Assembly: GCA_964057225.1 (NCBI GenBank) | Contig: OZ059898.1 | Coordinates: 10,044,001-10,108,000, forward strand | DNA: 64,000 bases | Direction of reading: 5' to 3' | Source of the DNA: Auanema rhodensis | Taxonomy: Eukaryota; Animalia; Nematoda | Part shown: piece after piece, positions 2,111-52,870 of the stretch | Layout: the number at the start of each line of letters is the position of its first letter | Numbering within the stretch: position 1 is the first letter of the stretch | Notes under the pieces: model-generated | Seen by the model: the letters and a program-made list of their open reading frames with translations, nothing else | What the model was told of the DNA's origin: nothing | Databases searched by the model: none | Made by a program: the position numbers and the translations under genes

Positions 2111-2181
2111 TGCATCGGCCGGGAATCGAACCCGGGTCGCCCGCGTGGCAGGCGAGCATTCTACCACTGAACCACCGATGC
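2111..2181 (-). tRNA. tRNA-Gly: tRNA-Gly(GCC)
   Basis: Minus strand GCATCGGTGGTTCAGTGGTAGAATGCTCGCCTGCCACGCGGGCGACCCGGGTTCGATTCCCGGCCGATGCA: full cloverleaf, A and B boxes, GCC anticodon, T4-5 run just downstream. Confidence 0.97.
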
Positions 2182-4132
2182 TTCGAAAATGTTAGATTGT
2201 TTCCGAAAAATCATGAAAAGTCAAGTTCTACTGATTTGAAGAAAATTGTAAGTTTTAGAAAATAATTAAAAATAAGTTCTCTCTACTATTAACTGATTGT
2301 CGGCTAAAATATGGTAACAGTTTTTATGAAAAGTTTCCATGATTAGGATTAAACAAAAAAAAGAATTAAAAAGAAACACTTCTTGTTTACTTATTTGATT
2401 ATAATACTTGAAATTCCAAAAACAGTAGAATAAAATAGAGAAAGAGACGAAAAAAGTTGAACGATTTGAAGAGAATTGTGAGTTTTAGAAAAGAATTAAA
2501 GTTTAGCTTTGTCTACTATTAACTGATTATCGGCTGAAATATGGTGACAGTTTTTTTTTAAAAGTTTCCATGATTAAGATTAATCAAAGAAAAAAAAATC
2601 AAAGAGAAACACTTCTTGTTTACTAATTTGATTATAACACTTGAAATTCCAACAAAAGTAAAGTAAAACTGTTAAAGCGAGTAAAACTGTTGAACAATTT
2701 GAAGACAATTGTAAGTTGAAGAATAAAATTAAAGTTTAGCTCTCTCTACTATTAACTGAATGTCGGCTAAAATATGGTAACAGTTTTTATTAAAAGTTTC
2801 CATGATTAAGATTAAACAAAGAAAAAAAATCAAAGAGAAAAACTTCTTGTTTACTAATTTGATTATAACACTTGAAATTCCAACAAAAGTAAAATAAAAC
2901 TGTGAAAGCGGGTAAAACTGTTGAACAATTTGAAGACAATTGTAACTTGAAGAATAAAATTAAAGTTTAGCTCTCTCTACTATTAACTGAATGTCGGCTA
3001 AAATATGGTAACAGTTTTTATTAAAAGTTTCCATGATTAAGATTAAACAAAGAAAAAAATCAAAGAGAAACACTTCTTGTTTACTTACTTGATTATAATA
3101 CTTGAAATTCCAAAAACAGTAAAATAAAATTGAAAAAGCGACAAAAACAGTTGAACGATTTGAAGACAATTGTAAGTTGAAGAATAAAATTAAAGTTTAG
3201 CTCTCTCTACTATTAACTGAATGTCGGCTAAAATATGGTAACAGTTTTTATTAAAAGTTTCCATGATTAAGATTAAACAAAGAAAAAAAATCAAAGAGAA
3301 ACACTTCTTGTTTACTTATTTGATTATAATACTTGAAATTCCAAAAACAGTAGAATAAAATAGAGAAAGAGACGAAAAAAGTTGAACGATTTGAAGAGAA
3401 TTGTGAGTTTTAGAAAAGAATTAAAGTTTAGCTTTGTCTACTATTAACTGATTATCGGCTGAAATATGGTGACAGTTTTTTTTCAAAAGTTTCCATGATT
3501 AAGATTAATCAAAGAAAAAAAAATCAAAGAGAAACACTTCTTGTTTACTAATTTGATTATAACACTTGAAATTCCAACAAAAGTAAAGTAAAACTGTTAA
3601 AGCGAGTAAAACTGTTGAACAATTTGAAGACAATTGTAAGTTGAAGAATAAAATTAAAGTTTAGCTATCTCTACTATTAACTGAATGTCGGCTAAAATAT
3701 GGTAACAGTTTTTATTAAAAGTTTCCATGATTAAGATTAAACAAAGAAAAAAAATCAAAGAGAAAAACTTCTTGTTTACTAATTTGATTATAACACTTGA
3801 AATTCCAACAAAAGTAAAATAAAACTGTGAAAGCGGGTAAAACTGTTGAACAATTTGAAGACAATTGTAAGTTGAAGAAAAAAATTAAAGTTTAGCTCTC
3901 TCTACTATTAACTGAATGTCGGCTAAAATATGGTAACAGTTTTTATTAAAAGTTTCCATGATTAAGATTAAACAAAGAAAAAAAATCAAAGAGAAACACT
4001 TCTTGTTTACTAATTTGATTATAACACTTGAAAATCCAACAAAAGTAAAATAAAACTGTAAAAGCGAGTAAAACTGTTGAAATAAAACAGTTTTTATTTT
4101 ATATAAATGATATTTTTTTATAAAAATGAAGT

Positions 4133-4203
4133 TGCATCGGCCGGGAATCGAACCCGGGTCGCCCGCGTGGCAGGCGAGCATTCTACCACTGAACCACCGA
4201 TGC
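4133..4203 (-). tRNA. tRNA-Gly: tRNA-Gly(GCC)
   Basis: Same 71-nt gene. Confidence 0.97.
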
Positions 4204-6391
4204 TTCGAAAATGTTAGATTGTTTCCGAAAAATCATGAAAAGTCAAGTTCTACTGATTTGAAGAAAATTGTAAGTTTTAGAAAATAATTAAAAATAAGTT
4301 CTCTCTACTATTAACTGATTGTCGGCTAAAATATGGTAACAGTTTTTATGAAAAGTTTCCATGATTAGGATTAAACAAAAAAAAGAATTAAAAAGAAACA
4401 CTTCTTGTTTACTTACTTGATTATACTACTTGAAATTCGAAAAAAAGTAAAAAACAATTGAGAAAGCGACATAAACAGTTGAACGATTTGAAGAGAATTG
4501 TAAGTTTAAGAAAAGATTTAAAGTTTAGCTTTGTCTACTATTAACTGATTATCGGCTGAAATATGGTGACAGTTTTTTATTAAAAGTTTCCATGATTAAG
4601 ATTAAACAAAGAAAAAAAAATCAAAGAGAAACACTTCTTGTTTACTTATTTGATTATAACACTTGAAATTCCAACAAAAGTAAAGTAAAACTGTTAAAGC
4701 GAGTAAAACTGTTGAACGATTTGAAGACAATTGTAAGTTGAAGAAAAAAATTAAAGTTTAGCTCTCTCTACTATTAACTGAATGTCGGCTGAAATGAGGT
4801 AACAGTTTTTATTAAAAGTTTCCATGATTTAGATTAAACAAAGAAAAAAATCAAAGAGAAACACTTCTTGTTTACTTATTTGATTATAATACTTGAAATT
4901 CCAAAAACAGAAGAATAAAATAGAGAAAGAGACGAAAAAAGTTGAACGATTTGAAGAGAATTGTGAGTTTTAGAAAAGAATTAAAGTTTAGCTTTGTCTA
5001 CTATTAACTGATTATCGGCTGAAATATGGTGACAGTTTTTTTTAAAAAGTTTCCATGATTAAGATTAATCAAAGAAAAAAAAATCAAAGAGAAACACTTC
5101 TTGTTTACTAATTTGATTATAACACTTGAAATTCCAACAAAAGTAAAGTAAAACTGTTAAAGCGAGTAAAACTGTTGAACAATTTGAAGACAATTGTAAG
5201 TTGAAGAATAAAATTAAAGTTTAGCTCTCTCTACTATTAACTGAATGTCGGCTAAAATATGGTAACAGTTTTTATTAAAAGTTTCCATGATTAAGATTGA
5301 ACAAAGAAAAAAAAATCAAAGAGAAACACTTCTTGTTTACTAATTCGATTATAACACTTGAAAATCCAACAAAAGTAAAATAAAACTGTAGAAGCGAGTA
5401 AAACTGTTGAACGATTTGAAGAGAATTGTGAGTTTTAGAAAAGAATTAAAGTTTAGCTTTGTCTACTATTAACTGATTATCGGCTGAAATATGGTGACAG
5501 TTTTTTTTTAAAAGTTTCCATGATTAAGATTAATCAAAGAAAAAAAAATCAAAGAGAAACACTTCTTGTTCACTTATTTGATTATAATACTTGAAATTCC
5601 GAAAACAGTAGAATAAAATAAAGAAAGCGACAAAAACAGTTGAACGATTTGAAGAGAATTGTAAGTTTAAGAAAAGATTTAAAGTTTAGCTTTGTCTACT
5701 ATTAACTGATTATCGGCTGAAATATGGTGACAGTTTTTCATTAAAAGTTTCCATGATTAAGATTAAACAAAGAAAAAAAAATCAAAGAGAAACACTTCTT
5801 GTTTACTTACTTGATTATAATACTTGAAATTCCAAAAACAGTAAAATAAAACTGTTAAAGCGAGTAAAACTGTTGAACGATTTGAAGACAATTGTAAGTT
5901 GAAGCAAAAAATTAAAGTTTAGCTCTCTCTACTATTTAATGATTGTCGGCTAAAATATGGTAACAGTTTTTATTAAAAGTTTCCATGATTAAGATTGAAC
6001 AAAGAAAAAAAAATCAAAGAGAAACACTTCTTGTTTACTTACTTGATTATAATACTTGAAATTCCAAAAACAGTAAAATAAAACTGTTAAAGCGAGTAAA
6101 ACTGTTGAACGATTTGAAGACAATTGTAAGTTGAAGAAAAAAATTAAAGTTTAGCTCTCTCTACTATTTAATGATTGTCGGCTAAAATATGGTAACAGTT
6201 TTTATTAAAAGTTTCCATGATTAAGATTGAACAAAGAAAAAAAAATCAAAGAGAAACACTTCTTGTTTACTAATTTGATTATAACACTTGAAAATCCAAC
6301 AAAAGTAAAATAAAACTGTAAAAGCGAGTAAAACTGTTGAACTAAAACAGTCTTTATAAAATATAAATGATATTTTTTATAAAAGTGAAGT

Positions 6392-6462
6392 TGCATCGGC
6401 CGGGAATCGAACCCGGGTCGCCCGCGTGGCAGGCGAGCATTCTACCACTGAACCACCGATGC
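6392..6462 (-). tRNA. tRNA-Gly: tRNA-Gly(GCC)
   Basis: Same 71-nt gene. Confidence 0.97.
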
Positions 6463-7949
6463 TTCGAAAATGTTAGATTGTTTCCGAAAAATCATGAAAA
6501 GTCAAGTTCTACTGATTTGAAGAAAATTGTAAGTTTTAGAAAATAATTAAAAATAAGTTCTCTCTACTATTAACTGATTGTCGGCTAAAATATGGTAACA
6601 GTTTTTATGAAAAGTTTCCATGATTAGGATTAAACAAAAAAAAGAATTAAAAAGAAACACTTCTTGTTTACTTATTTGATTATAATACTTGAAATTCCAA
6701 AAACAGTAGAATAAAATAGAGAAAGAGACGAAAAAAGTTGAACGATTTGAAGAGAATTGTGAGTTTTAGAAAAGAATTAAAGTTTAGCTTTGTCTACTAT
6801 TAACTGATTATCGGCTGAAATATGGTGACAGTTTTTTTTTAAAAGTTTCCATGATTAAGATTAATCAAAGAAAAAAAAATCAAAGAGAAACACTTCTTGT
6901 TTACTAATTTGATTATAACACTTGAAATTCCAACAAAAGTAAAGTAAAACTGTTAAAGCGAGTAAAACTGTTGAACAATTTGAAGACAATTGTAAGTTGA
7001 AGAATAAAATTAAAGTTTAGCTCTCTCTACTATTAACTGAATGTCGGCTAAAATATGGTAACAGTTTTTATTAAAAGTTTCCATGATTAAGATTAAACAA
7101 AGAAAAAAAATCAAAGAGAAAAACTTCTTGTTTACTAATTTGATTATAACACTTGAAATTCCAACAAAAGTAAAATAAAACTGTGAAAGCGGGTAAAACT
7201 GTTGAACAATTTGAAGACAATTGTAACTTGAAGAATAAAATTAAAGTTTAGCTCTCTCTACTATTAACTGAATGTCGGCTAAAATATGGTAACAGTTTTT
7301 ATTAAAAGTTTCCATGATTAAGATTAAACAAAGAAAAAAATCAAAGAGAAACACTTCTTGTTTACTTACTTGATTATAATACTTGAAATTCCAAAAACAG
7401 TAAAATAAAATTGAAAAAGCGACAAAAACAGTTGAACGATTTGAAGACAATTGTAAGTTGAAGAATAAAATTAAAGTTTAGCTCTCTCTACTATTAACTG
7501 AATGTCGGCTAAAATATGGTAACAGTTTTTATTAAAAGTTTCCATGATTAAGATTAAACAAAGAAAAAAAATCAAAGAGAAAAACTTCTTGTTTACTAAT
7601 TTGATTATAACACTTGAAATTCCAACAAAAGTAAAATAAAACTGTGAAAGCGGGTAAAACTGTTGAACAATTTGAAGACAATTGTAAGTTGAAGAAAAAA
7701 ATTAAAGTTTAGCTCTCTCTACTATTAACTGAATGTCGGCTAAAATATGGTAACAGTTTTTATTAAAAGTTTCCATGATTAAGATTAAACAAAGAAAAAA
7801 AATCAAAGAGAAACACTTCTTGTTTACTAATTTGATTATAACACTTGAAAATCCAACAAAAGTAAAATAAAACTGTAAAAGCGAGTAAAACTGTTGAAAT
7901 AAAACAGTTTTTATTTTATATAAATGATATTTTTTTATAAAAATGAAGT

Positions 7950-8020
7950 TGCATCGGCCGGGAATCGAACCCGGGTCGCCCGCGTGGCAGGCGAGCATTC
8001 TACCACTGAACCACCGATGC
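7950..8020 (-). tRNA. tRNA-Gly: tRNA-Gly(GCC)
   Basis: Same 71-nt gene. Confidence 0.97.
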
Positions 8021-9509
8021 TTCGAAAATGTTAGATTGTTTCCGAAAAATCATGAAAAGTCAAGTTCTACTGATTTGAAGAAAATTGTAAGTTTTAGAAA
8101 ATAATTAAAAATAAGTTCTCTCTACTATTAACTGATTGTCGGCTAAAATATGGTAACAGTTTTTATGAAAAGTTTCCATGATTAGGATTAAACAAAAAAA
8201 AGAATTAAAAAGAAACACTTCTTGTTTACTTACTTGATTATACTACTTGAAATTCGAAAAAAAGTAAAAAACAATTGAGAAAGCGACATAAACAGTTGAA
8301 CGATTTGAAGAGAATTGTAAGTTTAAGAAAAGATTTAAAGTTTAGCTTTGTCTACTATTAACTGATTATCGGCTGAAATATGGTGACAGTTTTTTATTAA
8401 AAGTTTCCATGATTAAGATTAAACAAAGAAAAAAAAATCAAAGAGAAACACTTCTTGTTTACTTATTTGATTATAACACTTGAAATTCCAACAAAAGTAA
8501 AGTAAAACTGTTAAAGCGAGTAAAACTGTTGAACGATTTGAAGACAATTGTAAGTTGAAGAAAAAAATTAAAGTTTAGCTCTCTCTACTATTAACTGAAT
8601 GTCGGCTGAAATGAGGTAACAGTTTTTATTAAAAGTTTCCATGATTTAGATTAAACAAAGAAAAAAATCAAAGAGAAACACTTCTTGTTTACTTATTTGA
8701 TTATAATACTTGAAATTCCAAAAACAGAAGAATAAAATAGAGAAAGAGACGAAAAAAGTTGAACGATTTGAAGAGAATTGTGAGTTTTAGAAAAGAATTA
8801 AAGTTTAGCTTTGTCTACTATTAACTGATTATCGGCTGAAATATGGTGACAGTTTTTTTTAAAAAGTTTCCATGATTAAGATTAATCAAAGAAAAAAAAA
8901 TCAAAGAGAAACACTTCTTGTTTACTAATTTGATTATAACACTTGAAATTCCAACAAAAGTAAAGTAAAACTGTTAAAGCGAGTAAAACTGTTGAACAAT
9001 TTGAAGACAATTGTAAGTTGAAGAATAAAATTAAAGTTTAGCTCTCTCTACTATTAACTGAATGTCGGCTAAAATATGGTAACAGTTTTTATTAAAAGTT
9101 TCCATGATTAAGATTAAACAAAGAAAAAAAATCAAAGAGAAAAACTTCTTGTTTACTAATTTGATTATAACACTTGAAATTCCAACAAAAGTAAAATAAA
9201 ACTGTGAAAGCGGGTAAAACTGTTGAACAATTTGAAGACAATTGTAAGTTGAAGAATAAAATTAAAGTTTAGCTCTCTCTACTATTAACTGAATGTCGGC
9301 TAAAATATGGTAACAGTTTTTATTAAAAGTTTCCATGATTAAGATTAAACAAAGAAAAAAAATCAAAGAGAAACACTTCTTGTTTACTAATTTGATTATA
9401 ACACTTGAAAATCCAACAAAAGTAAAATAAAACTGTAAAAGCGAGTAAAACTGTTGAAATAAAACAGTTTTTATTTTATATAAATGATATTTTTTTATAA
9501 AAATGAAGT

Positions 9510-9580
9510 TGCATCGGCCGGGAATCGAACCCGGGTCGCCCGCGTGGCAGGCGAGCATTCTACCACTGAACCACCGATGC
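9510..9580 (-). tRNA. tRNA-Gly: tRNA-Gly(GCC); element 1 is inserted 62 bp upstream
   Basis: Same 71-nt gene. Confidence 0.97.
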
Positions 9581-9642
9581 TTCGAAAATGTTAGATTGTT
9601 TCCGAAAAATCATGAAAAGTCAAGTTCTACTGATTTGAAGAA

Positions 9643-10055
9643 TGTTCCATACGTGTCCTATAAGTAGAGCGATTGACAACGTCAATCGCTTATAAAACGG
9701 AACATTATAAAAACAAATAGCTGACGCTACATTTGAGAAACAGGAATTCAATGCAACAATGAACGAACACTTTTTCATATTAAGTTTAATTAAAGAAAGC
9801 CCAATTCAAGCGGAACCAAGTTCCGCGGACCTGATATAACCACTTTTTATGCTCGTAAGGAATACTATATAAGGTTTCCTTACGAATCCTTTGGGCTGCG
9901 ACTAGGAATCATTATGTAACTTTTATTATTGTAATTTGTATACTTTATCATGAATAAACCTTTCTCTCTATACTCTTTATCATTTATATTTGGAAGAAAA
10001 GAAAGTAATTCCATGTGGTTACCCAGCCGGAACCCTGGGGAACCACCATGGAACG
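9643..10055 (+). repeat. 5' LTR of element 1 (TGTTCCAT...ATGGAACG)
   Basis: Identical by eye to 21479-21891; TATATAA at 9866-9872; AATAAA at 9953-9958. Confidence 0.96.
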
Positions 10056-10073
10056 TGGAGGTTCCGCCGAGAT
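10056..10073 (+). promoter_or_regulatory. Primer-binding site, tRNA-Gln
   Basis: TGGAGGTTCCGCCGAGAT directly after the LTR; complementary, with one G:U, to the metazoan tRNA-Gln 3' end ATCTCGGTGGAACCT-CCA (recalled, not searched). Confidence 0.85.
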
Positions 10074-10111
10074 TCGTCTATAACCGACGAATCTCTAAGA
10101 ACCATATTTCG

Positions 10112-10470
10112 CTACATAAATTTAATTTTGTTGTCTTTCATACATCTAATTAAAGAATTATATTTCGATTATGCTATATGAATTTAATTTGAAATCTTTC
10201 TCTTCTTTATTTCATTCATTCAAAGAACTTTATTTTGATTTTGATTCATAAATTAATTTTGAAATCTTATATACATTTATTTAAAAAGATATATTTTGAA
10301 ACAACTTAATTTTGAAATTTTATATTCATTCATTTAAAAGAAACATTTCGATTTTTATCCATATTCTAAGATCTTTCATTCATTTTTGAGGAAAAACTTT
10401 GTTTATAACTATCATAAATTAATTTGAAATTCTTTTATATTTATTCATTTAAAGAAAGGTATTTCGATAT
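10112..10470 (+). repeat. Degenerate ~60-75-bp AT-rich tandem repeat in element 1 leader
   Basis: Recurring aattaattttgaaatc...attcatttaaagaa...atttcgat, about 5-6 copies. Confidence 0.55.
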
Positions 10471-10671
10471 TTTTTTTTTCTGTCAATCTTTTCTTTTTCT
10501 GTTTTTTTTAATCAAAATCTATTCTATCTCTTATAAATTTTTGTTATAAAGTTTCAAACAATTTTTGAATCAAAAATGAATTAATTTCTTTTATGAATCA
10601 TCACAAAATTCATTGTTTTATATATATTAAAATCCATTAATTTCTATTCTATCCTTTAAAATGTATTACTC

Positions 10672-10674
<3 letters not shown>

Positions 10675-10716
<42 letters not shown>
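10675..10716. repeat. (TA)n microsatellite, about 21 units
   Basis: Directly visible. Confidence 0.95.
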
Positions 10717-10721
<5 letters not shown>

Positions 10722-11500
10722 GTACAAAACTATTCTATACTAGTACTATATTCCTACTATATTCCTACTATATTCCTATTTTATTTTTCTTTTATCTTCT
10801 TTTAAATTTTATCTTTTTCCCTCTCTTATTACTATTATTTTTTCTCTTCTTCCTAATATAACCCAGAAAACAGTCAAATAATTTTGAAATTTTTTTTTTA
10901 TCTGAATCCCGAAACTAAGATTTATAATTTTGCATTTTGATCCTAAAAGTAGCCCGTGAGAAGCAATACCAGACTGTCTCGAGAACTGAGCGGAGGCAAC
11001 CACTATTTTTGATATAAGACGTACGCATTCCTGATTTTGAAGATCCCTTTTTGGTCCTATTTTTGCAAATTTGAAAATTACGACAGAATTAGTCGAGAAT
11101 GAAAGTGTTAGAGTGGTCTCACCATGAAAATCAGGGGAGCAGAATTTCGTTAAGGGAGCGATTTCTGTGAATTTTCATAGGCAAGAGAAGTCTGGGAAAG
11201 TGAATGTACGAGGCCTGAGCACCTAATCTTGTCGAAAGACTGAAAGGGAATACTGCTTAGATCACCGTCGTATATTTCACGCCTATTCGAGAGATGGGAA
11301 CTTGATCCTAGAAAGGGCGCACCGGTCACAGGCCCGTGTATGTACCCGATTGAGCAATTCTCCGTTAGAAGATTCGCTGCAGGCTGGCCCCCTAGCAAGC
11401 GTCACGCATACAACCCCATATTGCCTCTCACGTTGTATATATATTTTTATAAGTTTCGCATCGTTGGTATAATAATTTCCTTTCCAGGAAAACCAACAAG

Positions 11501-14500
11501 ATGACGGACTCGAAGAGTAAAAATCCTCCGCAGGATAAAACAAATCCACAGAGCGCAGCCCCCGGTAATGATACGCACGTCGAGCCAGTACTCGAGCGGA
11601 ATCAAAGAAAAAGAGGACCTCCAAATGTTTATGAGCCGGACACGAAGCGCCGACCTACTGCTGCAAAGAAACCACCCGCTATACCGGGTACCCCCGCGAA
11701 GAAAATAGGCACAACAGCTATTAAAACTTCTCGCCACGCTATTACTCTAAGTAAAATTAAAGCGTCTATTAGCAAACAAACTCCAAAACGCACTTCTAAT
11801 GTTATCAAAAGCTCTAGTAATGTTAGCACAAATACTTCCCCTTGTAAAGATTATTCTCAAATTTTATCTTCATACCCAAATACTGCTATTCTTTCTTCTC
11901 CTCTTCCTCGAAATTCTCCCTCTTCATCCGATCAATCATTACATGGGCAATCTTCTTCTCCTGTATCTTCTCCGTCGGAAGTAACCACCAATTTCAATTT
12001 GAATGTTGCAGAGAAGAGAAAAATCGCTCAGATGACTGACCGGATGGATGACCACCCAAACTCCAATGATCAAACCCAAAACAACTCTAATTTCCGCATG
12101 CTACCCACGAACACTGTTTCTATTCGCCACCATAAACCCACCTTGTATGATGGAGCAGTACCTTTTAACCTCTACATGAGGAGATTGGAAGGTTATTTTG
12201 ACGCGTTGCAAGTACCTATGGCGGAGCGTCTGTCGCACCTCTATCTATTGTTGGGGACGGACAAAGCAGCCGATGCTTTACGTTGCATAACTCCGGACGA
12301 AATACGTCAAGGATGGAATAACGTAAAGCGCATTTTGTCTCTCAAACTTCAACCTCAAGAGAAACGAGATGCCGCGTTCACCAGACTCACTCACATGAAG
12401 CAAGGAGAGAGTGAAACTGTCAACCATTTTGCACAACGCTGTCGAAATCTGGCTTATGAAGCAAGCGATATGAACACCGATGCTGATGAACGTATATTAC
12501 GTGTAGCTTTCCTCGGTGGATTACGGAAACAACTACGTACGCACGTCAATAATCGAAGCCCAACCACCTTTGAATCAGCCGTCACTATCGCTGAAACCGT
12601 TGAAGCAGATGAGGACCCCTCTTCCTTCATCAACAACTTAACCGATGGACTAGATGATTTGAATATCAATAACGAGCACATCAATCACATGAGAGCTCCA
12701 CAGCGTGATAAAATTCATAGAGGACCGGCACCACATCTATCATCCAGGCCACACGACAATTCCTCACATCCACAAAGACCTCAAGAACCATGGCACCAAA
12801 GACGAGGAGGATACCGTCATAACGATGAAAGAAGAACAGGAAGATACCACCAATACAACGACAGGAACAGGAACAACAGACCACGTTCAAGAGGACCAAT
12901 CAACTACCGTAGCCCACACAGAAATAATAGGTATAACGACCGTTATGATAACAGATACAACAACAACTATCATCGCGGAAACCAGTACGATCGAAGATAC
13001 CAGAACAGAGATCACCATGAATCATATGGACCTAATTCGCGCTACAGAAATCGCACAAGTAGCCCATCAGTACGATTCCATGTTAACCAAGTTAACAATG
13101 AAACACCCCGCACGAGCAACAAGAAACTTCCATTCACACCTCTCTTCCTTTCCATCATGGCACTGACAATACTTCCTTGTCACGCAGACAACACCTACCA
13201 TCTATGCACCGGAACACGAGGAGGCATCTTTCTCGAACCCCCTCGGCCAACTTTATGCTCAGAAAACATACACAAGGATGGAGTTCAAATTACTAACGTC
13301 GAATTATTTGCAGAAAACATGCATTACAAGGAATGGGAGGCTTGGAAATGCTCCAAAGAAATCTACAGAACATGTGCTCACGATAGACTGTTCATTAGAG
13401 AAAACAATATCACTCTACTTTACGTCGAAGCCGCAACTCTCAAGGAATGTAAGGAAGCTATACAAGAAAGAAGACATATGGATACGAATCTTGTACGTAC
13501 AGCCCCAGGACTATTTAAGGCACCTTTACCTTTAAACAATCAGTCTTATTCATTTTGGTCTACATCGTGCACCTCAACTCCAAGATTAACGTTAGAAAGA
13601 GGAATGATGACTTGTCTACATGACGATATCATCATATCAGACCTTTTTCTCAACACGGAAGGATGTGCAAAGAAAGCAGGAACTTGTACAACGCACAATG
13701 CCATAATCGTTTGGACACCACCTCACGACCATCACGAATGTGACTTCAGCTCCTTAGGAAACTTCTCAGCACTTGTCAACAACGACACTGTCCTAATCTC
13801 GGAGATACAGAGCGCATTTATCCTCCAAGACCAGAAACCGGATAACATAGCAACTCGATGTTTAGGAAAGGATATACATGCAACGAATAGTGGTACATAC
13901 ATTCATATACCACCTAAAGAGACTCCAAGACGACAGAAAAGGAAAGCGCCACAAGAATACCCTACACGCTTTTTCAATATCACCATATATCCATCGTTAC
14001 GTCTTACGGACAGCTCTACAGGAATTATTCCAATGTATCAGAAGTATCGCAACCGGAAAAGATTGGATAATTCTTACAGTCTTATAGACTATCTGAAAAC
14101 TTCCAGTATTCACGTAGGACTTACAAAATTCCTCAAGTTAGACGCAATCGCGATCAAGGAAACACTATTATGGTACAACTACAACGACACTAATATCGCC
14201 ATTCTACATGCGCTGGCAAAAGCAGAAATTCTCCTAGCAACAGAAATTGCTATCGCGCATCTCCTACCATCTGAGCTCACAGAAAAACTGAGTAAACAAA
14301 TCACGATTAAGGAGTTCGCCGATAAGTTGGAAAAACGCACAGGAGACTACTTAGAGCGAGCGAGAGACATTGCATTTGAAATCGCACAAACTCCCGCAGT
14401 ATTAGCAACAGGAGAAACGATTCCTTCATTAGAAGAATATTTATTTCAACTATACCCACCTAGGATGTCGAGAAGAACAACTCCTAGAATGGACACTTCG

Positions 14501-17308
14501 TTTTACACACAAATCGACGAAGTATTAAACTTTATTGACTATATAGCATCACATAATCGTCTGCTACATATATCAACAGAAGAACGCGAAAAAGAGAGCA
14601 GAAAGTGGAATAAATTGGAAGAGGAATCAACTAGTCCAAGGATTATTTTTCCTAATTACGCAATCATCTTTAAAGGACTAGCTCAGAACTTTGGACTGCC
14701 ACGTGGTACACCAACGACTAAAACTATTTCACAGGAAGAAAGCGAGAGATTTCAACGAACATATCTTGAATTAATCGACTCCCTCACGTATTCAACAACA
14801 ACGACTACGACTACCACGACTTCCGCAAGCACTACAAGCTCTACTACGCCCGCGACTACAACAACGACTTTTCGAACTACTCCCAAACCTTTCCACACTC
14901 CCAGAACATTATCACCAAGCTCTACAACTACTCCAAGAAGATATCACTACTATCAAGCTACGACAACGCCATTCTCATTACCAAAACAGCTTGTAACGCG
15001 AACAGAAATTCCGCAAATCTCTTCAACAGTGATAGAGCCAAGGACAACAACCAAACGAGCCGCCACAACACCTCAACAAGCAAGAGAAGTCCAATCTCAC
15101 ATAGGACAGCAAGCACACGCTAATTTTCTTCGTACAAGACATGATATCATCCAGAAATATGATGAACAATTACGTCAACTGGATACACAATCGCATCTAC
15201 AATATTCAACCTCGCAACTAGAAGAAGAAATTTTGAAGGCGTTTCAAAAAACGAAAAAGGACATCTGTAGGATGCAAAACAAACAACTCCTTACGTGGTG
15301 GGCCATTCTACAAATCAACCCAACTATTGGTATCCGCACAATGCTTAGACGTCAGGATATATCAGCTAAATTCGTTGCTGAACACCTTATCTACGTAATG
15401 CCTTGCACACCTATCCACGTAACAAAAATCTACTCGGATCACAAAAGAAACGGAACATGTTACATGGAAACACCAGTAGATACAGAACATCATGGAGAAC
15501 TGTTTTTAATACCTGGAACACGCGATATTTCACCAATGGGCAGACGAATCGACTGCATGATGGCTACAACGGATCCATATAAATTAGACGACCAATGGAT
15601 GAAGGAAAACACAACATTAAATGTGACGAACCTATCATTTGCGGACGAACTCACTTCGATCAAAATCGATCACATAAAATTCAACAACTCCAACATATAT
15701 GCCAACCTCACGGAATCTTCATTCCCGTTTGAACTCGCTATTTCATACGGATCCAGCCTAGCGTCTCTACAAGCCACCTTGCCAGGAAGATTGAAACCTA
15801 TATTTAACAACAAGAAAGGAATCAGTCTGAATCCACTCAACATTCTTGAAAATGCCATAACAATTCCTATCGTAGTGGGAGACATCGTCGGAAACACGGC
15901 AAACGAAGGAATTTCCAGCTTCTTCGCTTTTATTGGAGAAACTTTCAAGGCCTGGCTATTAAGAACACTTGCCACAATCGGCGCAATCATCGTGATAATA
16001 GGACTCATCACCGCGCTGATTTACGGAATCAAAATATACGCACGTGTCACAAGAATTCCCATCAATTATATCGAAGAAGATGATGAAGAAAGAAGAGAAC
16101 ATCCAGCCCAAGAGACCGAACTGCAGCCGTTAAGAAGAGCGACACAAGACAACTACCATGCTCCACTTTCACGCTATGATCCCGATGCACCATTAACAGA
16201 TAGCGATCTGCTAACCTATCTGCCCAGGTACGCTATTAAAGAATCAAAGATAAACTACATTGGGGGATCCCGATTACCATTCGTACCCATATCAATTTAC
16301 AACCAAGTTTTTACTGCACTATGGGATACAGGTGCATCAATTTCATATATGAAAGAGAGCACTTTCAATCAATTACCGGCAGCAAAAATGGTCGCTGAGA
16401 AAACTACAGCTGTTGTAGCAAACAAGTCTCGATTTTCCTTCCTAGGATATACAAGACTGCCAATAATAATTGGAAAGACCGAAATTGACCACAAAATATT
16501 GATATCTTCCGACAATCATTGCCCAGCACCAATATTGCTTGGAATAGATTTTATTGAAGCACTCAACAGAGAAGGAATCCTCACATCCTTACGCCCTCTG
16601 CAAAATTCATTGCTGATTGGAGATACCACGGTACCTCTAGCGCAAAACTACAATGCATGGACAGAAAAACACACAATTACACACGTTGTTAGTCTGGAAA
16701 CTAAACAATTTTACCCCGGAGAAACAAGATCTCTAACTTTGGAAGTAAATGATCCCGCCTCATTCGAACAAGCTTTTATTAGAAGCTCACAACGAGCAGG
16801 AAAAATGAGTTTTGCGCCTACAACTTTCACCCCAACAGGATATGGAGTCCAGATATTTGCTACAAATATCTCTTCGGATACAATCGAAGTCCAGACAAAC
16901 CAAGGCATTGGAACAGCTTATGCTATCCCCAAAAACACGGAGGAGCAAAAAGGACAATATGTACCACCAGAAGCAAGATGGGAAGATCAACTACCATTCT
17001 TCCCAGATGATTTCATAAAAGATCTAGATGTCTCAAATTCCATCTTCACTCAATTAGAAAGACAACAATTAAAGAAAATAGTACTTAGAAATAAGGAAGC
17101 TTTCTTGAACGAGGATCGAAATATCGGACTTTTCAAAGGACCAGTGGAACATAGCATCCCGATCATCGAAGGAAAAGTTCCATCTTTCAAGATCACGTAC
17201 AGAATACCTCTATCACAACAAGAAGAAGTAGAAAAACAAGTGGAGGAAATGTTAGAACAAGGAATAATTGAGCCATCTTTTTCTATGACTACCAGTCCCG
17301 TAATATAG
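11501..17308 (+). CDS. gag: Gag - class III envelope glycoprotein - aspartic protease - RT N-terminus polyprotein, ended by in-frame TAG
   Basis: Capsid motifs YDG...MKQGESETVNHF...FLGGL; R/N/Y-rich NC-like region without CCHC; signal peptide; Cys-rich ectodomain; TM; ALWDTGAS; RT start ...QGIIEPS..SPVI*. Confidence 0.92.
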   Translation: MTDSKSKNPPQDKTNPQSAAPGNDTHVEPVLERNQRKRGPPNVYEPDTKRRPTAAKKPPAIPGTPAKKIGTTAIKTSRHAITLSKIKASISKQTPKRTSNVIKSSSNVSTNTSPCKDYSQILSSYPNTAILSSPLPRNSPSSSDQSLHGQSSSPVSSPSEVTTNFNLNVAEKRKIAQMTDRMDDHPNSNDQTQNNSNFRMLPTNTVSIRHHKPTLYDGAVPFNLYMRRLEGYFDALQVPMAERLSHLYLLLGTDKAADALRCITPDEIRQGWNNVKRILSLKLQPQEKRDAAFTRLTHMKQGESETVNHFAQRCRNLAYEASDMNTDADERILRVAFLGGLRKQLRTHVNNRSPTTFESAVTIAETVEADEDPSSFINNLTDGLDDLNINNEHINHMRAPQRDKIHRGPAPHLSSRPHDNSSHPQRPQEPWHQRRGGYRHNDERRTGRYHQYNDRNRNNRPRSRGPINYRSPHRNNRYNDRYDNRYNNNYHRGNQYDRRYQNRDHHESYGPNSRYRNRTSSPSVRFHVNQVNNETPRTSNKKLPFTPLFLSIMALTILPCHADNTYHLCTGTRGGIFLEPPRPTLCSENIHKDGVQITNVELFAENMHYKEWEAWKCSKEIYRTCAHDRLFIRENNITLLYVEAATLKECKEAIQERRHMDTNLVRTAPGLFKAPLPLNNQSYSFWSTSCTSTPRLTLERGMMTCLHDDIIISDLFLNTEGCAKKAGTCTTHNAIIVWTPPHDHHECDFSSLGNFSALVNNDTVLISEIQSAFILQDQKPDNIATRCLGKDIHATNSGTYIHIPPKETPRRQKRKAPQEYPTRFFNITIYPSLRLTDSSTGIIPMYQKYRNRKRLDNSYSLIDYLKTSSIHVGLTKFLKLDAIAIKETLLWYNYNDTNIAILHALAKAEILLATEIAIAHLLPSELTEKLSKQITIKEFADKLEKRTGDYLERARDIAFEIAQTPAVLATGETIPSLEEYLFQLYPPRMSRRTTPRMDTSFYTQIDEVLNFIDYIASHNRLLHISTEEREKESRKWNKLEEESTSPRIIFPNYAIIFKGLAQNFGLPRGTPTTKTISQEESERFQRTYLELIDSLTYSTTTTTTTTTSASTTSSTTPATTTTTFRTTPKPFHTPRTLSPSSTTTPRRYHYYQATTTPFSLPKQLVTRTEIPQISSTVIEPRTTTKRAATTPQQAREVQSHIGQQAHANFLRTRHDIIQKYDEQLRQLDTQSHLQYSTSQLEEEILKAFQKTKKDICRMQNKQLLTWWAILQINPTIGIRTMLRRQDISAKFVAEHLIYVMPCTPIHVTKIYSDHKRNGTCYMETPVDTEHHGELFLIPGTRDISPMGRRIDCMMATTDPYKLDDQWMKENTTLNVTNLSFADELTSIKIDHIKFNNSNIYANLTESSFPFELAISYGSSLASLQATLPGRLKPIFNNKKGISLNPLNILENAITIPIVVGDIVGNTANEGISSFFAFIGETFKAWLLRTLATIGAIIVIIGLITALIYGIKIYARVTRIPINYIEEDDEERREHPAQETELQPLRRATQDNYHAPLSRYDPDAPLTDSDLLTYLPRYAIKESKINYIGGSRLPFVPISIYNQVFTALWDTGASISYMKESTFNQLPAAKMVAEKTTAVVANKSRFSFLGYTRLPIIIGKTEIDHKILISSDNHCPAPILLGIDFIEALNREGILTSLRPLQNSLLIGDTTVPLAQNYNAWTEKHTITHVVSLETKQFYPGETRSLTLEVNDPASFEQAFIRSSQRAGKMSFAPTTFTPTGYGVQIFATNISSDTIEVQTNQGIGTAYAIPKNTEEQKGQYVPPEARWEDQLPFFPDDFIKDLDVSNSIFTQLERQQLKKIVLRNKEAFLNEDRNIGLFKGPVEHSIPIIEGKVPSFKITYRIPLSQQEEVEKQVEEMLEQGIIEPSFSMTTSPVI
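13121..16030 (+). other. env: Env-like class III fusion glycoprotein domain inside polyprotein 1
   Basis: Signal KKLPFTPLFLSIMALTILPCHA (13121-13186); N-glycosylation sequons; furin site RRQKR (13928-13942); Thr-rich tract; gB-like ICRMQN..W..INP..CTPI..CY..PV..P.TR..IDC (15263-15556); TM 15953-16030. Confidence 0.82.
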
Positions 17309-20308
17309 GTCAAGAAAAAGGATAAAACATATAGATTTGTGACTGATTTTCGAGCACTTAACGCAATAACGCAAAAACAAATCTACGTTATATCTAACAT
17401 TCAAGATATCTTGGACCTAGCAGCCGGAGCACGTATCTTCAGTAACTTTGATCTAGTATCTGGATTCTTTCAAATCCCTCTTAGATCAGAAGATAGACAC
17501 CTCACCGCATTCACTACTACGAGCGGAACTTATCAATACTGCAGAATGCCGATGGGACTCTGCGGAGCTCCACACACATTCCAAAATGCAGTACGATATT
17601 TACAACAACACGTACGATGCAAGCTCTTCGTCTATCTCGACGATCTACTTCTCATATCGGAATCAACGACAAAACATTTACAAGATATCGACGAAGTACT
17701 GAACGCATCAGCAGAGCTAGGATTAAAAATCAAGCGTAAGAAATGTACCTTTGGACAACAAGAAGTCAAATTCCTAGGATTCATTGTTGGACACGAAGGA
17801 ATAAAACCAGACCCTCAGAAAGTAAAAGCAATCCAAGATTATCCAAGACCAAAATCAATCACAGGAGTTCGAGCATTCATGGGAGTTGTAAACTACTTCC
17901 GGAGATTCATTAGGAATGCCGCAGGCATTGCATCACCGCTTTATGACCTCACAAAAAAGGATAAAACCTTCACATGGGGAGACAAAGAAGAAAAATCTTT
18001 TCAACACCTAAAGAAAGCACTTTGCGAAGCACCAGTCCTCCAAGCGCCTAGAGCAAAACGGCCATATGTAGTCGAAAGCGACGGAAGCATTATTGCAGTA
18101 GGAGCAGTTTTATTGCAATCCGCGGACGACCGAGAACCACTACACCCAATAGCTTTCGCTAGCCGTAAACTGAACAGAGCAGAAAGGAACTATCCTCCCA
18201 TTGAGATTGAAGCCTTAGCTCTAACTTTTGCGGTTCACCAATTTCGTACCTACATCCTAGGGGCACCGATCAAAATTATTACCGATCATAGACCCTTAAC
18301 CAGTCTTATGACGAGGAAAGATCTTATTGGAAGATTAGCCAAATTTCAAATAGTACTCCAAGAGTATGACATTGAAATTATCTATCGCCCAGGACGCCTT
18401 AATAGCGTTTGCGACGCTTTATCAAGGTACTTTGAGGACGAAATTAACGAAGCAAAAGAAAGGAAAAAGAAGCCGACAATAAAGACAACATCTCATCAAG
18501 TTTCGACAATCTCAACTGTAACGGACCTAAGGACCATTCAAAACGACACAGAATGGATCAAAGAAACTAAAGAGAAGCTGTCAAATAACAACGCTGGGAC
18601 ACAACTAACGGATAGATACATCGTTTTGAATGATGTTCTATACGCTAAACCCAAATCAGCTCTACAAACTCCACGAGCTATTCTGCCAAGTGACTCATCA
18701 ATTACCACACCAATTATCGAGAAATTCCACAAAGACCCCATTCTCGGAGCACATCTTGGAATCAATAAGACTCAAGACTCCATTTTGCGACGGTACACTT
18801 GGACAGGAATACAGGATGATATCACAAGATATGTGAACAGATGTCTCGACTGTGCAAAGAGGAAAAATAACCCACATGAAGCCACAGTCGAACCAATGAG
18901 AAACTTCCCAACAGTGACACATCCATGGGAACGAGTTCACATGGACATACTAGGACCATTACCTAGAACTGCAAAGGATAATAGATACATTTTATCTATA
19001 CAGGACGCATTTTCCAAATGGATTATAGCGATACCATTAATTCGTCAGACATCAGAAGAAATAGTATCAGCTATTATGACACACTTATTCTATGTCTTCG
19101 GACCCCCAAAGAAAATCATCACAGACAATGGATCAAACTTTGTCTCACACGAATTCAAAAGCATGTGCGATAACCTTGGATCGGAACATCACACTACTAT
19201 GCCATACTACAAGAACGCAAATGGTCAAGTAGAACGACTACATAGAACGCTGGAAGAAGCATTAACTTCTTACGTTAATGCCGATCAAGATAATTGGGAC
19301 ATTATTTTACCCAAAATTGTCTTTACGATCAACCGACTACCAAACGCCACAACTCGCACACCACCCTACGATTGTCTATTTGGACAAACAGCTCGTCTAC
19401 CAATGGATAAGGACCTAGAAACACCAGAAGCCACAATCAAGAACGCCCCAGATTTACATAAGAAGATTCAGAATAGAATTGAATTAAGTAATGAAAGGAT
19501 GAAAAAGAAATATGACGAGAAACACAGAACCGAAGAAAGAGAGATCTACGTAGAAGATAGGGCATTGGTCAAACGAGCAAAACCAACGAACAAATTGCAA
19601 AAGACGAGCGATGGACCATATATCATCAAGAAGATAATTGGAAATAATGTTACGTTAGCAGATAGGGAAGGAAAAACGATGAAGGCTCACAAAAATAACA
19701 TCAGATTTTTCCCTCCGGATGACAACCCAACGGAAGAAATTACACTGATGACCAGAACTCATTTATCTGATTCGGACAGTGAAGAAGAAACGTTCTATCA
19801 AAACGAACAACCATTTACACGAAACAGCCCGTCGACAACAAATATCAACGAAAATACTTTGGAAACAGACATAGAACTTGCGGAAAGTTCACAAATCAGT
19901 CCAAATCAGGACGCACCAATACCAGGAATCACAGAAGAAACGTCAACAACAGAGTCTAGAGAACAAAACCAGACGATCAAGGCTTTTCAAAAACTATCAG
20001 AGGAAATAGAAGAAAACGCAAGAAAAGAATTATATGAGGAACGGAAGAAGGAGCCACCCACAATTAAGAAATGGAGTTCAGCACTTAAATTGGCATTGGG
20101 ATTAGAAGATAATTCCCCTACAACGCCAGCAAAACCTTATCATGTGCCGATAAGGTATCACAGCACCATACCAGTAACAGAGCCGAAGAAGAGAGTTTCG
20201 AAGAGTCAGATCCCGGACCCAAACTTCGTGGCACCAACAGTACCAGTCATCCATAAAAAAAGACCATCAACAGTTATTGGGACTACAAGTAAGAAGCTAG
20301 AACAATAG
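17309..20308 (+). CDS. pol: Pol: RT, RNase H, integrase; same frame as the upstream ORF, resuming right after the TAG
   Basis: VKKKD..RFVTDFR, MPMGL, YLDD (17633-17644), ESDGS/ITDHRPL/DALSR, H-H-C-C, D-D-E (MDILGP, TDNGSNF, VERLHRTL), GPY. Confidence 0.95.
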   Translation, partial: VKKKDKTYRFVTDFRALNAITQKQIYVISNIQDILDLAAGARIFSNFDLVSGFFQIPLRSEDRHLTAFTTTSGTYQYCRMPMGLCGAPHTFQNAVRYLQQHVRCKLFVYLDDLLLISESTTKHLQDIDEVLNASAELGLKIKRKKCTFGQQEVKFLGFIVGHEGIKPDPQKVKAIQDYPRPKSITGVRAFMGVVNYFRRFIRNAAGIASPLYDLTKKDKTFTWGDKEEKSFQHLKKALCEAPVLQAPRAKRPYVVESDGSIIAVGAVLLQSADDREPLHPIAFASRKLNRAERNYPPIEIEALALTFAVHQFRTYILGAPIKIITDHRPLTSLMTRKDLIGRLAKFQIVLQEYDIEIIYRPGRLNSVCDALSRYFEDEINEAKERKKKPTIKTTSHQVSTISTVTDLRTIQNDTEWIKETKEKLSNNNAGTQLTDRYIVLNDVLYAKPKSALQTPRAILPSDSSITTPIIEKFHKDPILGAHLGINKTQDSILRRYTWTGIQDDITRYVNRCLDCAKRKNNPHEATVEPMRNFPTVTHPWERVHMDILGPLPRTAKDNRYILSIQDAFSKWIIAIPLIRQTSEEIVSAIMTHLFYVFGPPKKIITDNGSNFVSHEFKSMCDNLGSEHHTTMPYYKNANGQVERLHRTLEEALTSYVNADQDNWDIILPKIVFTINRLPNATTRTPPYDCLFGQTARLPMDKDLETPEATIKNAPDLHKKIQNRIELSNERMKKKYDEKHRTEEREIYVEDRALVKRAKPTNKLQKTSDGPYIIKKIIGNNVTLADREGKTMKAHKNNIRFFPPDDNPTEEITLMTRTHLSDSDSEEETFYQNEQPFTRNSPSTTNINENTLETDIELAESSQISPNQDAPIPGITEETSTTESREQNQTIKAFQKLSEEIEENARKELYEERKKEPPTIKKWSSALKLALGLEDNSPTTPAKPYHVPIRYHSTIPVTEPKKRVSKSQIPDPNFVAPTVPVIHKKRPSTVIGTTSKKLEQ

Positions 20309-20671
20309 TAAAAATCCATAATTTCTACATAAAAATCACAAAAAGTATAATACCATTTTCATAATTTTCATCTAAACTTGAAACCTATATATAATTTTTT
20401 TTTCTCATTTAAGTAATACATAAAATTCTACACAAATTATTGTACATTTTTATTTTTCACTCTCATAAAAATATTGTATTAATAACCAAAAATTTCAAAA
20501 TAAAATTATACATCATACTTGGAATCTTTCAAAAATCACTGCAAAGTTTTAATCAACAATCTTCATCACTTTTTCACCTAACTGGTCAAAAAGGAGGCGA
20601 CAAAAAGGAAGGAACAGACCGACCTAGTTTTAAAAAGGATAAAAGGACAGAAAACAGTAACAAAGATAACA

Positions 20672-21274: not shown

Positions 21275-21478
21275 AAAGGAACTTTTGAAAGATTCCCAGT
21301 ATGATATATGATATATTATTTTGTAATTACATTGTTTTCCTTTATTTTTTTCTCATAAAATTGTTCTGTATTATCAGTATTCTTTTATTTTTTGAAACAT
21401 TTCATACAACTTTCACATTTGCATGGAATTTCACTTTCTCGATGTAGCTGAGGTCAGCTACTTTTTCGATATTAGGCA

Positions 21479-23324: not shown

Positions 23325-23395
23325 TGCATAGGCCGGGAATCGAACCCGGGTCGCCCGCGTGGCAGGCGAGCATTCTACCACTGAACCACCGATGC
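23325..23395 (-). tRNA. tRNA-Gly: tRNA-Gly(GCC), G68U acceptor-stem variant
   Basis: Plus strand tgcatAggcc instead of tgcatCggcc. Confidence 0.9.
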
Positions 23396-24190: not shown

Positions 24191-24261
24191 TGCATCGGCC
24201 GGGAATCGAACCCGGGTCGCCCGCGTGGCAGGCGAGCATTCTACCACTGAACCACCGATGC
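24191..24261 (-). tRNA. tRNA-Gly: tRNA-Gly(GCC)
   Basis: Same 71-nt gene. Confidence 0.97.
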
Positions 24262-52808: not shown

Positions 52809-52870
52809 TTCGAAAATGTTAGATTGTTTCCGAAAAATTATGAAAAGTCAAGTTCTACTGATTTGAAGAG

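What the first reader, a model, noticed from the sequence alone, without database searches (positions are those of the whole stretch)
9581..9643. Both retroelements integrate exactly 62 bp upstream of a tRNA-Gly gene
Seen: tRNA +1 at 9580 with LTR start 9643; tRNA +1 at 52808 with LTR start 52871. Both gaps are 62 bp (..ttctactgatttgaagaa| and ..ttctactgatttgaagag|), for different families in opposite orientations. The gatttgaagaNaattg motif occurs in roughly 150 monomers here but only 31 neighbour a tRNA, so position relative to the Pol III gene explains it better than the motif alone. Known: Ty3, Ty1 and Dictyostelium DGLT-A/TRE5 target tRNA genes through Pol III machinery. A fixed -59..-62 site, near the upstream edge of the TFIIIB footprint, in an env-bearing animal Gypsy clade would be a separate case. 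Only two events are visible.
Basis: partly seen in the sequence, partly recalled or inferred. Interest (0 to 1): 0.9.

Follow-up and report, generated by a model that had tools for sequence, protein, structure and literature searches.

The report
Same-site retroelement insertions upstream of tRNA-Gly
Two different nematode-type retrovirus-like elements are inserted at exactly the same nucleotide, 62 bp upstream of two tRNA-Gly genes in a satellite array; this shows site-specific integration, but two events cannot show whether the tRNA gene or the repeated satellite motif is the target.

Summary
Thirty-one tRNA-Gly(GCC) genes, all on the minus strand, lie in a ~231-bp AT-rich satellite. Element A (9643-21891, + strand) and element B (52871 to beyond 64000, - strand) each abut the 62nd base upstream of a tRNA +1. 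A is a clean, very young insertion: its 413-bp LTRs are 100% identical, it has a 4-bp duplication (AGAA), and its flanks match intact units 62/62 and 199/200. The two elements are distinct families (54% identity in pol). Both belong to the known nematode gag-env-pol Ty3/gypsy group with a herpesvirus-gB-like fusion protein.

Random insertion is excluded (about 8e-4 for the second hit). The same 18-bp core also occurs in 78 monomers with no tRNA. A "motif only" null gives p = 0.04 to 0.19 for both hits being next to a tRNA. That favours a role for the tRNA gene only weakly.

Four relatives with resolved ends, from Caenorhabditis and Cylicocyclus, have other duplications (ATAT, AAAA, GTTG) and no Pol III gene nearby. 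Any tRNA targeting would therefore be specific to this lineage. Other copies from the source genome could not be obtained.

A precedent exists in amoebae: Dictyostelium lacteum DGLT-A inserts 63-64 bp upstream of tRNAs. The held literature showed none in animals.

Verdict: site-specific integration is shown; anchoring to Pol III is plausible (about 0.5) but unproven.

The parts
1..9642 (-). Left part of the host array: 5 tRNA-Gly(GCC) genes interleaved with 6-9 copies of a ~231-bp AT-rich satellite monomer
9510..9580 (-). tRNA-Gly(GCC) gene next to element A; canonical variant, identical to 23 others; T-run terminator downstream
9581..9642 (.). 62-bp spacer between tRNA +1 and element A: 51 bp of tRNA-cassette 5' flank plus the first 11 bp of the satellite motif GATTTGAAGAN
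   Evidence: 62/62 identical to intact units
9639..9642 (+). Left copy of A's 4-bp target-site duplication, AGAA (positions -59 to -62 from the tRNA)
9643..21891 (+). Element A: complete LTR retroelement, 12,249 bp, nematode gag-env-pol Ty3/gypsy type
9643..10055 (+). A 5' LTR, 413 bp, starts TGTTCC and ends GGAACG
   Evidence: 100% identical to the 3' LTR
10056..10073 (+). A primer-binding site (TGGAGGTTCCGCC..); not complementary to the neighbouring tRNA-Gly; same type as in the relatives L001, L002, L005 and L006
11501..20308 (+). A polyprotein reading frame: gag, gB-like class III fusion glycoprotein, protease, RT, RNase H, integrase. One frame throughout, interrupted by one in-frame stop (programmed read-through or a single nonsense change; not decided). 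No frameshift.
   Evidence: PF03732, PF24664 E=3e-15, PF13975, PF00078, PF17919, PF17921, PF00665
20672..21274 (+). A extra 200-aa ORF just upstream of the 3' LTR; no Pfam match and no homologue found
21479..21891 (+). A 3' LTR, 413 bp
21892..21895 (+). Right copy of A's target-site duplication, AGAA, followed by the rest of a tRNA-adjacent-type monomer
   Evidence: 199/200 to an intact unit
21892..52870 (-). Central part of the host array: 26 tRNA-Gly genes spaced 633-1924 bp apart, satellite monomers, and higher-order duplications
52738..52808 (-). tRNA-Gly(GCC) gene next to element B; canonical variant
52809..52870 (.). 62-bp spacer between tRNA +1 and element B. Its last 4 bp, AGAG (52867-52870), are the presumed tRNA-side duplication copy.
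   Evidence: 62/62 identical to intact units
52871..64000 (-). Element B: a second family of the same group, cut by the end of the window (5' LTR and far flank not in the window)
52871..53214 (-). B 3' LTR, 344 bp, inverted ends CGTTCC...GGAACG, preceded by a purine tract
53910..62831 (-). B single uninterrupted 2973-aa ORF: Ser/Thr/Pro-rich N-terminal region, gag, gB-like fusion glycoprotein, protease, RT, RNase H, integrase

Best explanation
Two distinct but related nematode gag-env-pol Ty3/gypsy elements integrated independently. In both, the integrase made the same 4-bp staggered cut at -59 to -62 upstream of a tRNA-Gly gene. This step is shown.

The most likely reason for the shared site is that the tRNA gene itself helps choose it. 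The intasome would be positioned at a fixed distance from the Pol III transcription complex, near the expected upstream edge of TFIIIB. It would then be free to insert in either orientation. Local sequence (the AGAR step in GATTTGA|AGAR|AATTG) may fine-tune the exact bond. This step is inferred.

In a satellite-rich array, tRNA genes would also be the accessible and harmless landing sites. This last point is speculation.
For: - Both junctions are exactly 62 bp from tRNA +1.
- A is a clean insertion with a 4-bp duplication and identical LTRs.
- The elements are independent: 54% pol identity and opposite orientation.
- 2 of 31 tRNA-adjacent sites are occupied against 0 of about 120 equivalent sites without a tRNA, of which 78 are identical over the 18-bp core. 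This gives p = 0.042 at best.
- A tetranucleotide preference alone cannot explain the coincidence: AGAA and AGAG occur about 1,440 times in the host DNA on both strands.
- Both neighbouring tRNAs are the canonical variant, with intact A and B boxes and a T-run terminator.
- The primer-binding site is not complementary to tRNA-Gly, so homology does not explain the association.
- Precedent: fixed-distance targeting upstream of tRNA genes arose at least six times in dictyostelids, including LTR elements at 63-64 and 55-65 bp (PMC5006619).
Against: - There are only two events, at one tRNA isotype and in one array.
- The insertion point lies inside the repeated satellite motif, 7 bp beyond the tRNA cassette, so motif and tRNA distance are confounded.
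- Relatives with the same PBS type and 4-bp duplications (L001, L005, L006, plus L002 without a clean duplication) have no tRNA or other Rfam Pol III gene within about 2-9 kb.
- No recognisable targeting domain was found in the integrase C-terminal tails.
- No animal precedent turned up.
- It is unknown whether the arrayed tRNA genes are transcribed.
Confidence: 0.5

Rival explanations
1. Satellite-motif targeting. The integrases, or a host protein or phased nucleosome bound to every 231-bp monomer, recognise the monomer-start motif GATTTGAAGANAATTG. Any monomer can be hit. That both hits adjoin a tRNA is coincidence, helped by the fact that AGAA-type sites are almost all tRNA-adjacent.
For: - The insertion point lies within the motif shared by all monomers.
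- The 18-bp core is identical in 78 monomers without a tRNA.
- 15 of 18 AGAA sites are tRNA-adjacent, so A's position is nearly forced if it needs AGAA. The joint probability is then up to 0.19.
- Relatives show no tRNA association.
- One relative in C. remanei lies beside a 184-bp satellite.
- Host-factor-guided, motif-linked integration is known for Tf1 with Sap1 (my own knowledge).
Against: - 0 of about 120 motif sites without a tRNA are occupied, against 2 of 31 with one (p = 0.042 if sites are equivalent).
- The relatives' duplications (ATAT, AAAA, GTTG) show no shared sequence specificity in the clade.
- I know of no precedent for an LTR-element integrase recognising a site of 16 bp or more.
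Confidence: 0.35
2. Retention bias. Insertions occur at the motif in any monomer. Copies inside long homogeneous monomer runs are lost faster through unequal exchange or array homogenisation, so survivors sit next to tRNA cassettes.
For: The array is clearly dynamic: tRNA spacing varies from 633 to 2259 bp and blocks are duplicated.
Against: - Element A is essentially new (LTRs 100% identical), which leaves little time for differential loss.
- tRNA-containing higher-order units are themselves repeated, so they are no safer from unequal exchange.
- No solo LTRs or element fragments occur elsewhere in the window.
Confidence: 0.07
3. There is no real specificity: the coincidence is chance or an assembly artefact in a repetitive region.
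For: The region is highly repetitive and only two events are seen.
Against: - The uniform-insertion probability is about 8e-4.
- Both junction flanks match intact units base for base, and A has a proper 4-bp duplication.
- The two junctions involve different elements and opposite LTR ends, which a collapse or duplication artefact would not produce.
Confidence: 0.03

Closest known systems
Dictyostelium lacteum DGLT-A.1 and DGLT-A.2 (Ty3/gypsy LTR retrotransposons; Spaller et al. 2016, PMC5006619)
   Same: These are LTR elements of the Ty3/gypsy group without a chromodomain. They are found at a narrow, fixed distance upstream of tRNA genes: 63-64 bp (4 copies) and 55-65 bp (2 copies). That is nearly the same distance as here.
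   Different: The hosts are amoebozoans with compact genomes. The elements carry no env gene and target many tRNA isotypes at dispersed genes. Here there is one isotype in a satellite array and a repeated sequence motif at the site. Their mechanism is also unknown.
Saccharomyces cerevisiae Ty3
   Same: It is a Ty3/gypsy element. Its integrase is positioned by the Pol III pre-initiation complex (TFIIIB), and it inserts in either orientation with nucleotide precision (PMC5006619; cryo-EM preprint 10.1101/2021.07.27.453949 listed).
   Different: Ty3 inserts 1-4 bp from the transcription start, about 15 bp upstream of the mature 5' end. That is the opposite edge of TFIIIB. By my own knowledge its duplication is 5 bp. 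It has no env gene.
Dictyostelium TRE5-A (non-LTR)
   Same: It inserts about 50 bp upstream of tRNA genes, close to the presumed upstream edge of the Pol III complex.
   Different: It is a non-LTR element using target-primed reverse transcription with an endonuclease, not an integrase.
Non-canonical nematode endogenous retroviruses, gag-env-pol with gB-type env (Sacco et al. 2022, J Gen Virol, as cited in PMC13524379); Cer1 clade
   Same: The architecture is the same: LTRs, gag, a herpesvirus-gB-like class III fusion protein placed before pol, then PR-RT-RH-IN. The best protein matches are rhabditid nematodes.
   Different: The eLife paper does not mention an integration-site preference for this group (0 occurrences of 'integration site' or 'target site'). 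I could not read Sacco et al. itself.
Schizosaccharomyces pombe Tf1 guided by Sap1 (my own knowledge, not tested here)
   Same: It is the model for the rival explanation: a host DNA-binding protein at a sequence motif fixes the insertion point of an LTR element a set distance away.
   Different: Tf1 targets Pol II promoters. No satellite-binding factor is known here.

Membership tests
Ty3/gypsy (Metaviridae) LTR retroelement, nematode gag-env-pol group | Two LTRs, a PBS beginning TGG next to the 5' LTR, a purine tract before the 3' LTR, and a short target-site duplication | tested here: met
   A has 413-bp identical LTRs, the PBS TGGAGGTTCCGCC, and a 4-bp duplication AGAA. For B, only the 3' LTR and purine tract are visible.
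Ty3/gypsy (Metaviridae) LTR retroelement, nematode gag-env-pol group | Domain order PR-RT-RNase H-IN (integrase last) | tested here: met
   Pfam hits lie in this order in both elements.
Ty3/gypsy (Metaviridae) LTR retroelement, nematode gag-env-pol group | A gB-type (class III) fusion glycoprotein placed between gag and pol | tested here: met
   PF24664 scores E=3e-15 (A) and 7.5e-17 (B), with PF00606 weaker. There are weak matches to solved herpesvirus gB chains, E about 1e-3. The arrangement is described for nematodes in PMC13524379.
Pol III-gene (tRNA)-targeting retrotransposon | Most genomic copies, including solo LTRs, lie in a narrow distance window from tRNA genes | tested here: inconclusive
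   2 of 2 visible copies lie at -62, but there are only two copies in one array. Other copies from the source genome were not obtainable.
Pol III-gene (tRNA)-targeting retrotransposon | Targeting is independent of flanking sequence and of tRNA isotype | tested here: inconclusive
   Both events are at tRNA-Gly(GCC) and inside the same satellite motif. The motif-only null gives p = 0.04-0.19.
Pol III-gene (tRNA)-targeting retrotransposon | Physical contact of the integrase with TFIIIB, TFIIIC or Pol III subunits | not testable with these tools
   No known targeting domain was found in the integrase tails. Absence of a Pfam hit says little.
Pol III-gene (tRNA)-targeting retrotransposon | The trait is shared by close relatives | tested here: not met
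   L001, L002, L005 and L006 (38-63% identical pol, same PBS type) have no tRNA or other Rfam RNA gene within about 2-9 kb of either end. These are distant relatives from other genera, so the test bears on the clade and not on families A and B.
Sequence-specific satellite-targeting element | Insertions at the same position in monomers regardless of neighbouring genes | tested here: inconclusive
   Both insertions are at the same position in the motif, but 0 of about 120 monomers without a tRNA are occupied.

The most novel reading that the evidence does not exclude
A lineage of env-bearing nematode retrovirus-like elements has independently evolved Pol III-complex-guided integration at a fixed site 59-62 bp upstream of tRNA genes. 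This would be the first such case in an animal. The very large tRNA/satellite arrays of its host, possibly germline-restricted DNA as described for Auanema, would serve as a harmless landing zone.
Probability: 0.4. Interest if true: 0.8.

Novelty: new variant of a known kind. Interest (0 to 1): 0.6.

Why it matters
Targeted integration is how retroelements persist without killing their host, and it is the natural model for engineering safe insertion. Guidance by Pol III complexes is known only from yeasts and social amoebae. An animal example in an element that also carries a viral fusion protein would extend this convergent solution to metazoans. It would also give a second integrase group that uses the upstream rather than the downstream edge of the Pol III complex.

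If the target is instead the satellite motif, that is also unusual. It would be an LTR element with nucleotide-exact specificity for a tandem repeat, something known mainly from non-LTR elements.

Either way the array records site-specific integration by two families. The question can be settled by a simple census of the source genome.

Tried and rejected
- **Other copies in the same genome.** An exact look-up of A's 200-aa ORF found nothing. Protein searches with the RT-IN piece, the 200-aa ORF and the gag-env-PR piece gave no hit closer than 68% identity, none at all, and one distant hit respectively. The source genome is therefore not in the protein collection.
- **Metagenome and viral contig scans.** These gave only 28-33% relatives or nothing.
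- **Closest relatives on contigs.** Those from Auanema sp. JU1783, C. auriculariae and Logan runs (L003, L004, L012) lie on contigs too short to show flanks.
- **Solo LTRs or fragments of A or B elsewhere in the window.** None found.
- **B's second LTR.** Not in the window.
- **Homology between the PBS and the neighbouring tRNA-Gly.** Rejected as an explanation.
- **A simple tetranucleotide preference.** Rejected as sufficient, because there are about 1,440 such sites.
- **A chromodomain or other targeting domain in the integrase tails.** None found.
- **Sacco et al. 2022 and the eLife supplementary tables.** Not held.
- **Human sequence.** The window is not human. It is nematode-like by its best protein matches.

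Full report
**Observation**

ARAGORN finds 31 tRNA-Gly(GCC) genes, all on the minus strand. Rfam's tRNA model confirms all 31 at the same coordinates. The genes at 9510-9580 and 52738-52808 have their +1 at 9580 and 52808.

Reading the sequence, host DNA identical to that upstream of every other tRNA copy runs to 9642 (..gatttgaagaa) and to 52870 (..gatttgaagag). Foreign sequence starts at 9643 and 52871.

**The host array**

Outside the two elements, the window is one array. A ~231-bp monomer with about 26% G+C is repeated 2-9 times between tRNA cassettes, and the tRNA genes are 633-2259 bp apart. Each tRNA cassette sits exactly at a monomer boundary, so the monomer-start motif GATTTGAAGANAATTGTAAG begins at -52 of every tRNA.

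Twenty-four tRNA copies are identical and canonical. Seven carry one substitution each. All are followed by a T-run. Both tRNAs next to the elements are canonical copies.

The best protein matches of the elements are rhabditid nematodes: Auanema sp. JU1783 at 68%, Heterorhabditis bacteriophora at 55%, and Caenorhabditis at about 40-49%. A 2026 preprint reports 19,554 tRNA loci in Auanema rhodense, with tRNA arrays among its germline-restricted tandem repeats (10.64898/2026.08.27.747507). That the window comes from such a genome is my inference and is not shown. It is not human.

**The elements**

Element A spans 9643-21891.
- Its 413-bp LTRs are 100% identical. They start TGTTCC and end GGAACG.
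- The PBS is TGGAGGTTCCGCC.
- A 4-bp duplication AGAA lies on both sides.
- The left flank matches an intact unit 62/62. The right flank matches a tRNA-adjacent-type monomer 199/200.

It is therefore a simple and very recent insertion.

A's coding region is one reading frame carrying gag, a gB-like class III fusion glycoprotein (PF24664, E=3e-15), protease, RT, RNase H and integrase. One in-frame stop interrupts it and there is no frameshift. Whether that stop is read through or is a defect cannot be told from sequence. A 200-aa ORF without relatives follows.

Element B runs from 52871 to the window end on the minus strand.
- Its 344-bp 3' LTR ends against the tRNA side and has the inverted ends CGTTCC...GGAACG.
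- A single 2973-aa ORF carries the same domain order.
- Its env part weakly matches solved herpesvirus gB chains.
- Its 5' LTR and far flank lie beyond the window, so its duplication is presumed (AGAG) and not shown.

A and B are 54% identical in pol. They are different families of one group. The gag-env-pol arrangement with a gB-type env is already described for nematodes (Sacco et al. 2022, cited in PMC13524379).

**Is it more than chance?**

With uniform insertion into 40,621 bp of host DNA, the second element hits the same offset from a tRNA with probability 31/40621, about 8e-4. A bare preference for AGAA or AGAG does not help, since there are about 1,440 such tetranucleotides. Integration is therefore site-specific. 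This is the solid part of the finding.

**tRNA gene or motif?**

The cut lies inside the satellite motif, 7 bp beyond the tRNA-cassette sequence. With at most 3 mismatches there are 149 intact motif sites plus the 2 occupied ones, and 31 of these 151 adjoin a tRNA. Over the 18-bp core (7 + 4 + 7), 78 sites without a tRNA are identical to used-type sites.

| Motif-only null | P(both hits tRNA-adjacent) |
|---|---|
| All 151 motif sites equal | (31/151)^2 = 0.042 |
| Only AGAA/AGAG sites usable | 0.13 |
| Each element needs its own tetranucleotide | 15/18 x 16/69 = 0.19 |

The third row matters because AGAA sites are almost all tRNA-adjacent.

The data therefore favour involvement of the tRNA gene by a likelihood ratio of only about 5 to 24. 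tRNA-adjacent monomers are also a distinct sequence variant from 8 bp to the left and 12 bp to the right of the cut. Recognition of a longer, variant-specific sequence cannot be excluded.

**Relatives**

I could not obtain other copies from the same genome. Relatives with visible flanks were fetched from other nematodes:

| Locus | Species | Duplication |
|---|---|---|
| L001 | C. brenneri | AAAA |
| L005 | C. brenneri | ATAT (LTRs identical) |
| L006 | Cylicocyclus nassatus | GTTG |
| L002 | C. auriculariae | none clean |

All have the same PBS type, TGGAGGTTCC... None has a tRNA near either end by ARAGORN, and Rfam finds no RNA gene at all in these loci. A C. remanei relative (L007) is followed by a 184-bp satellite.

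Neither tRNA targeting nor a shared target sequence is therefore a trait of the wider clade. Whatever A and B do is specific to their lineage.

**Mechanism**

Shown: two independent integrations with the same 4-bp staggered cut at -59 to -62, in both orientations.

Inferred, and my best explanation at about 0.5: the Pol III complex on the tRNA gene positions the intasome at its upstream edge, with local sequence possibly fixing the exact bond.

| Rival | Confidence |
|---|---|
| Motif, satellite-bound factor or phased nucleosome; tRNA adjacency coincidental | 0.35 |
| Retention bias | 0.07 |
| Chance or artefact | 0.03 |

The PBS is not complementary to tRNA-Gly. The integrase tails carry no known targeting domain.

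**Comparison with known systems**

The nearest functional parallel is not Ty3, which inserts at about -15. It is the D. lacteum DGLT-A elements, at 63-64 and 55-65 bp upstream of tRNAs, and the non-LTR TRE5-A at about 50 bp (PMC5006619). A site near -60 therefore has precedent.

An animal host and an env-bearing element do not. The 2018 review of Pol III targeting contains no mention of animals, and three literature searches found no animal case.

As elements, A and B are ordinary new members of the known nematode gag-env-pol group. As a targeting behaviour, membership in the class of tRNA-targeting retrotransposons is untested on its defining features (many copies, several isotypes, independence of flanking sequence).

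**Verdict**

Site-specific integration is established. The Pol III interpretation is plausible but under-determined by two confounded events.

A census of LTR junctions in the source genome would settle it. The direct experimental test lies outside what this report may propose.

Noticed in passing
window 11501-20308 (+) and 53910-62831 (-): Both elements carry a herpesvirus-gB / Monjiviricetes-type class III fusion glycoprotein domain between gag and protease, inside the same reading frame as pol. In B everything is one 2973-aa ORF. This matches the 'non-canonical' nematode gag-env-pol ERVs in the literature. How an envelope protein would be released from the middle of a polyprotein is not obvious.
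   Followed up: partly
window 1-9642 and 21892-52870: 31 tRNA-Gly(GCC) genes lie in about 40 kb. Each sits in a ~176-bp cassette placed exactly at a boundary of the 231-bp satellite monomer. Multi-kb blocks are duplicated (for example 35564-36633, 38353-39422 and 48804-49873). This resembles the tRNA-bearing tandem arrays reported for Auanema rhodense germline-restricted DNA.
   Followed up: partly
window tRNAs with +1 at 23395, 25822, 31765, 41491, 44141, 47658, 48752: Seven of the 31 tRNA copies carry one substitution each (three variant types in stems or near the B box) and score 61 instead of 66.6 bits. The other 24 are identical.
   Followed up: yes
window 36470-36633, 39259-39422, 49710-49873: Short 64-bp tandem units are made of a monomer start fused to the middle of the monomer (an internally deleted monomer), repeated 2.6 times and present in three duplicated blocks.
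   Followed up: no
window 10056-11500: Element A has an unusually long (~1.4 kb), very AT-rich leader between the PBS and gag (23.5% G+C over 10001-11000). It contains ~70-bp tandem repeats, a (TA)23 run and 11/22-bp repeats.
   Followed up: no
window 20672-21274 (+): A 200-aa ORF lies between integrase and the 3' LTR of element A. It has no Pfam match and no homologue in the protein collection. No comparable ORF exists in the corresponding part of B.
   Followed up: partly
window 9643-10055, 52871-53214; L001: The LTR ends are non-canonical. A is TG...CG and B is CG...CG (6-bp inverted ends CGTTCC/GGAACG) instead of TG...CA. The C. brenneri relative L001 also ends ..TTACG.
   Followed up: partly
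window 61400-62831 (-): The first ~460 residues of B's polyprotein, upstream of gag, are Ser/Thr/Pro/Lys-rich and of low complexity, with no family match.
   Followed up: no
L007:3635-10869: A C. remanei relative (42% identical pol) is followed within about 360 bp of its pol stop by more than 7 kb of a 184-bp satellite. This may be another element of this clade sitting in, or carrying, a tandem repeat.
   Followed up: no
L005:1-1773: The C. brenneri locus also holds part of a Pao-type element with a phlebovirus-G2-like env (PF07245). This is a second, unrelated env-bearing retroelement type in nematodes.
   Followed up: no
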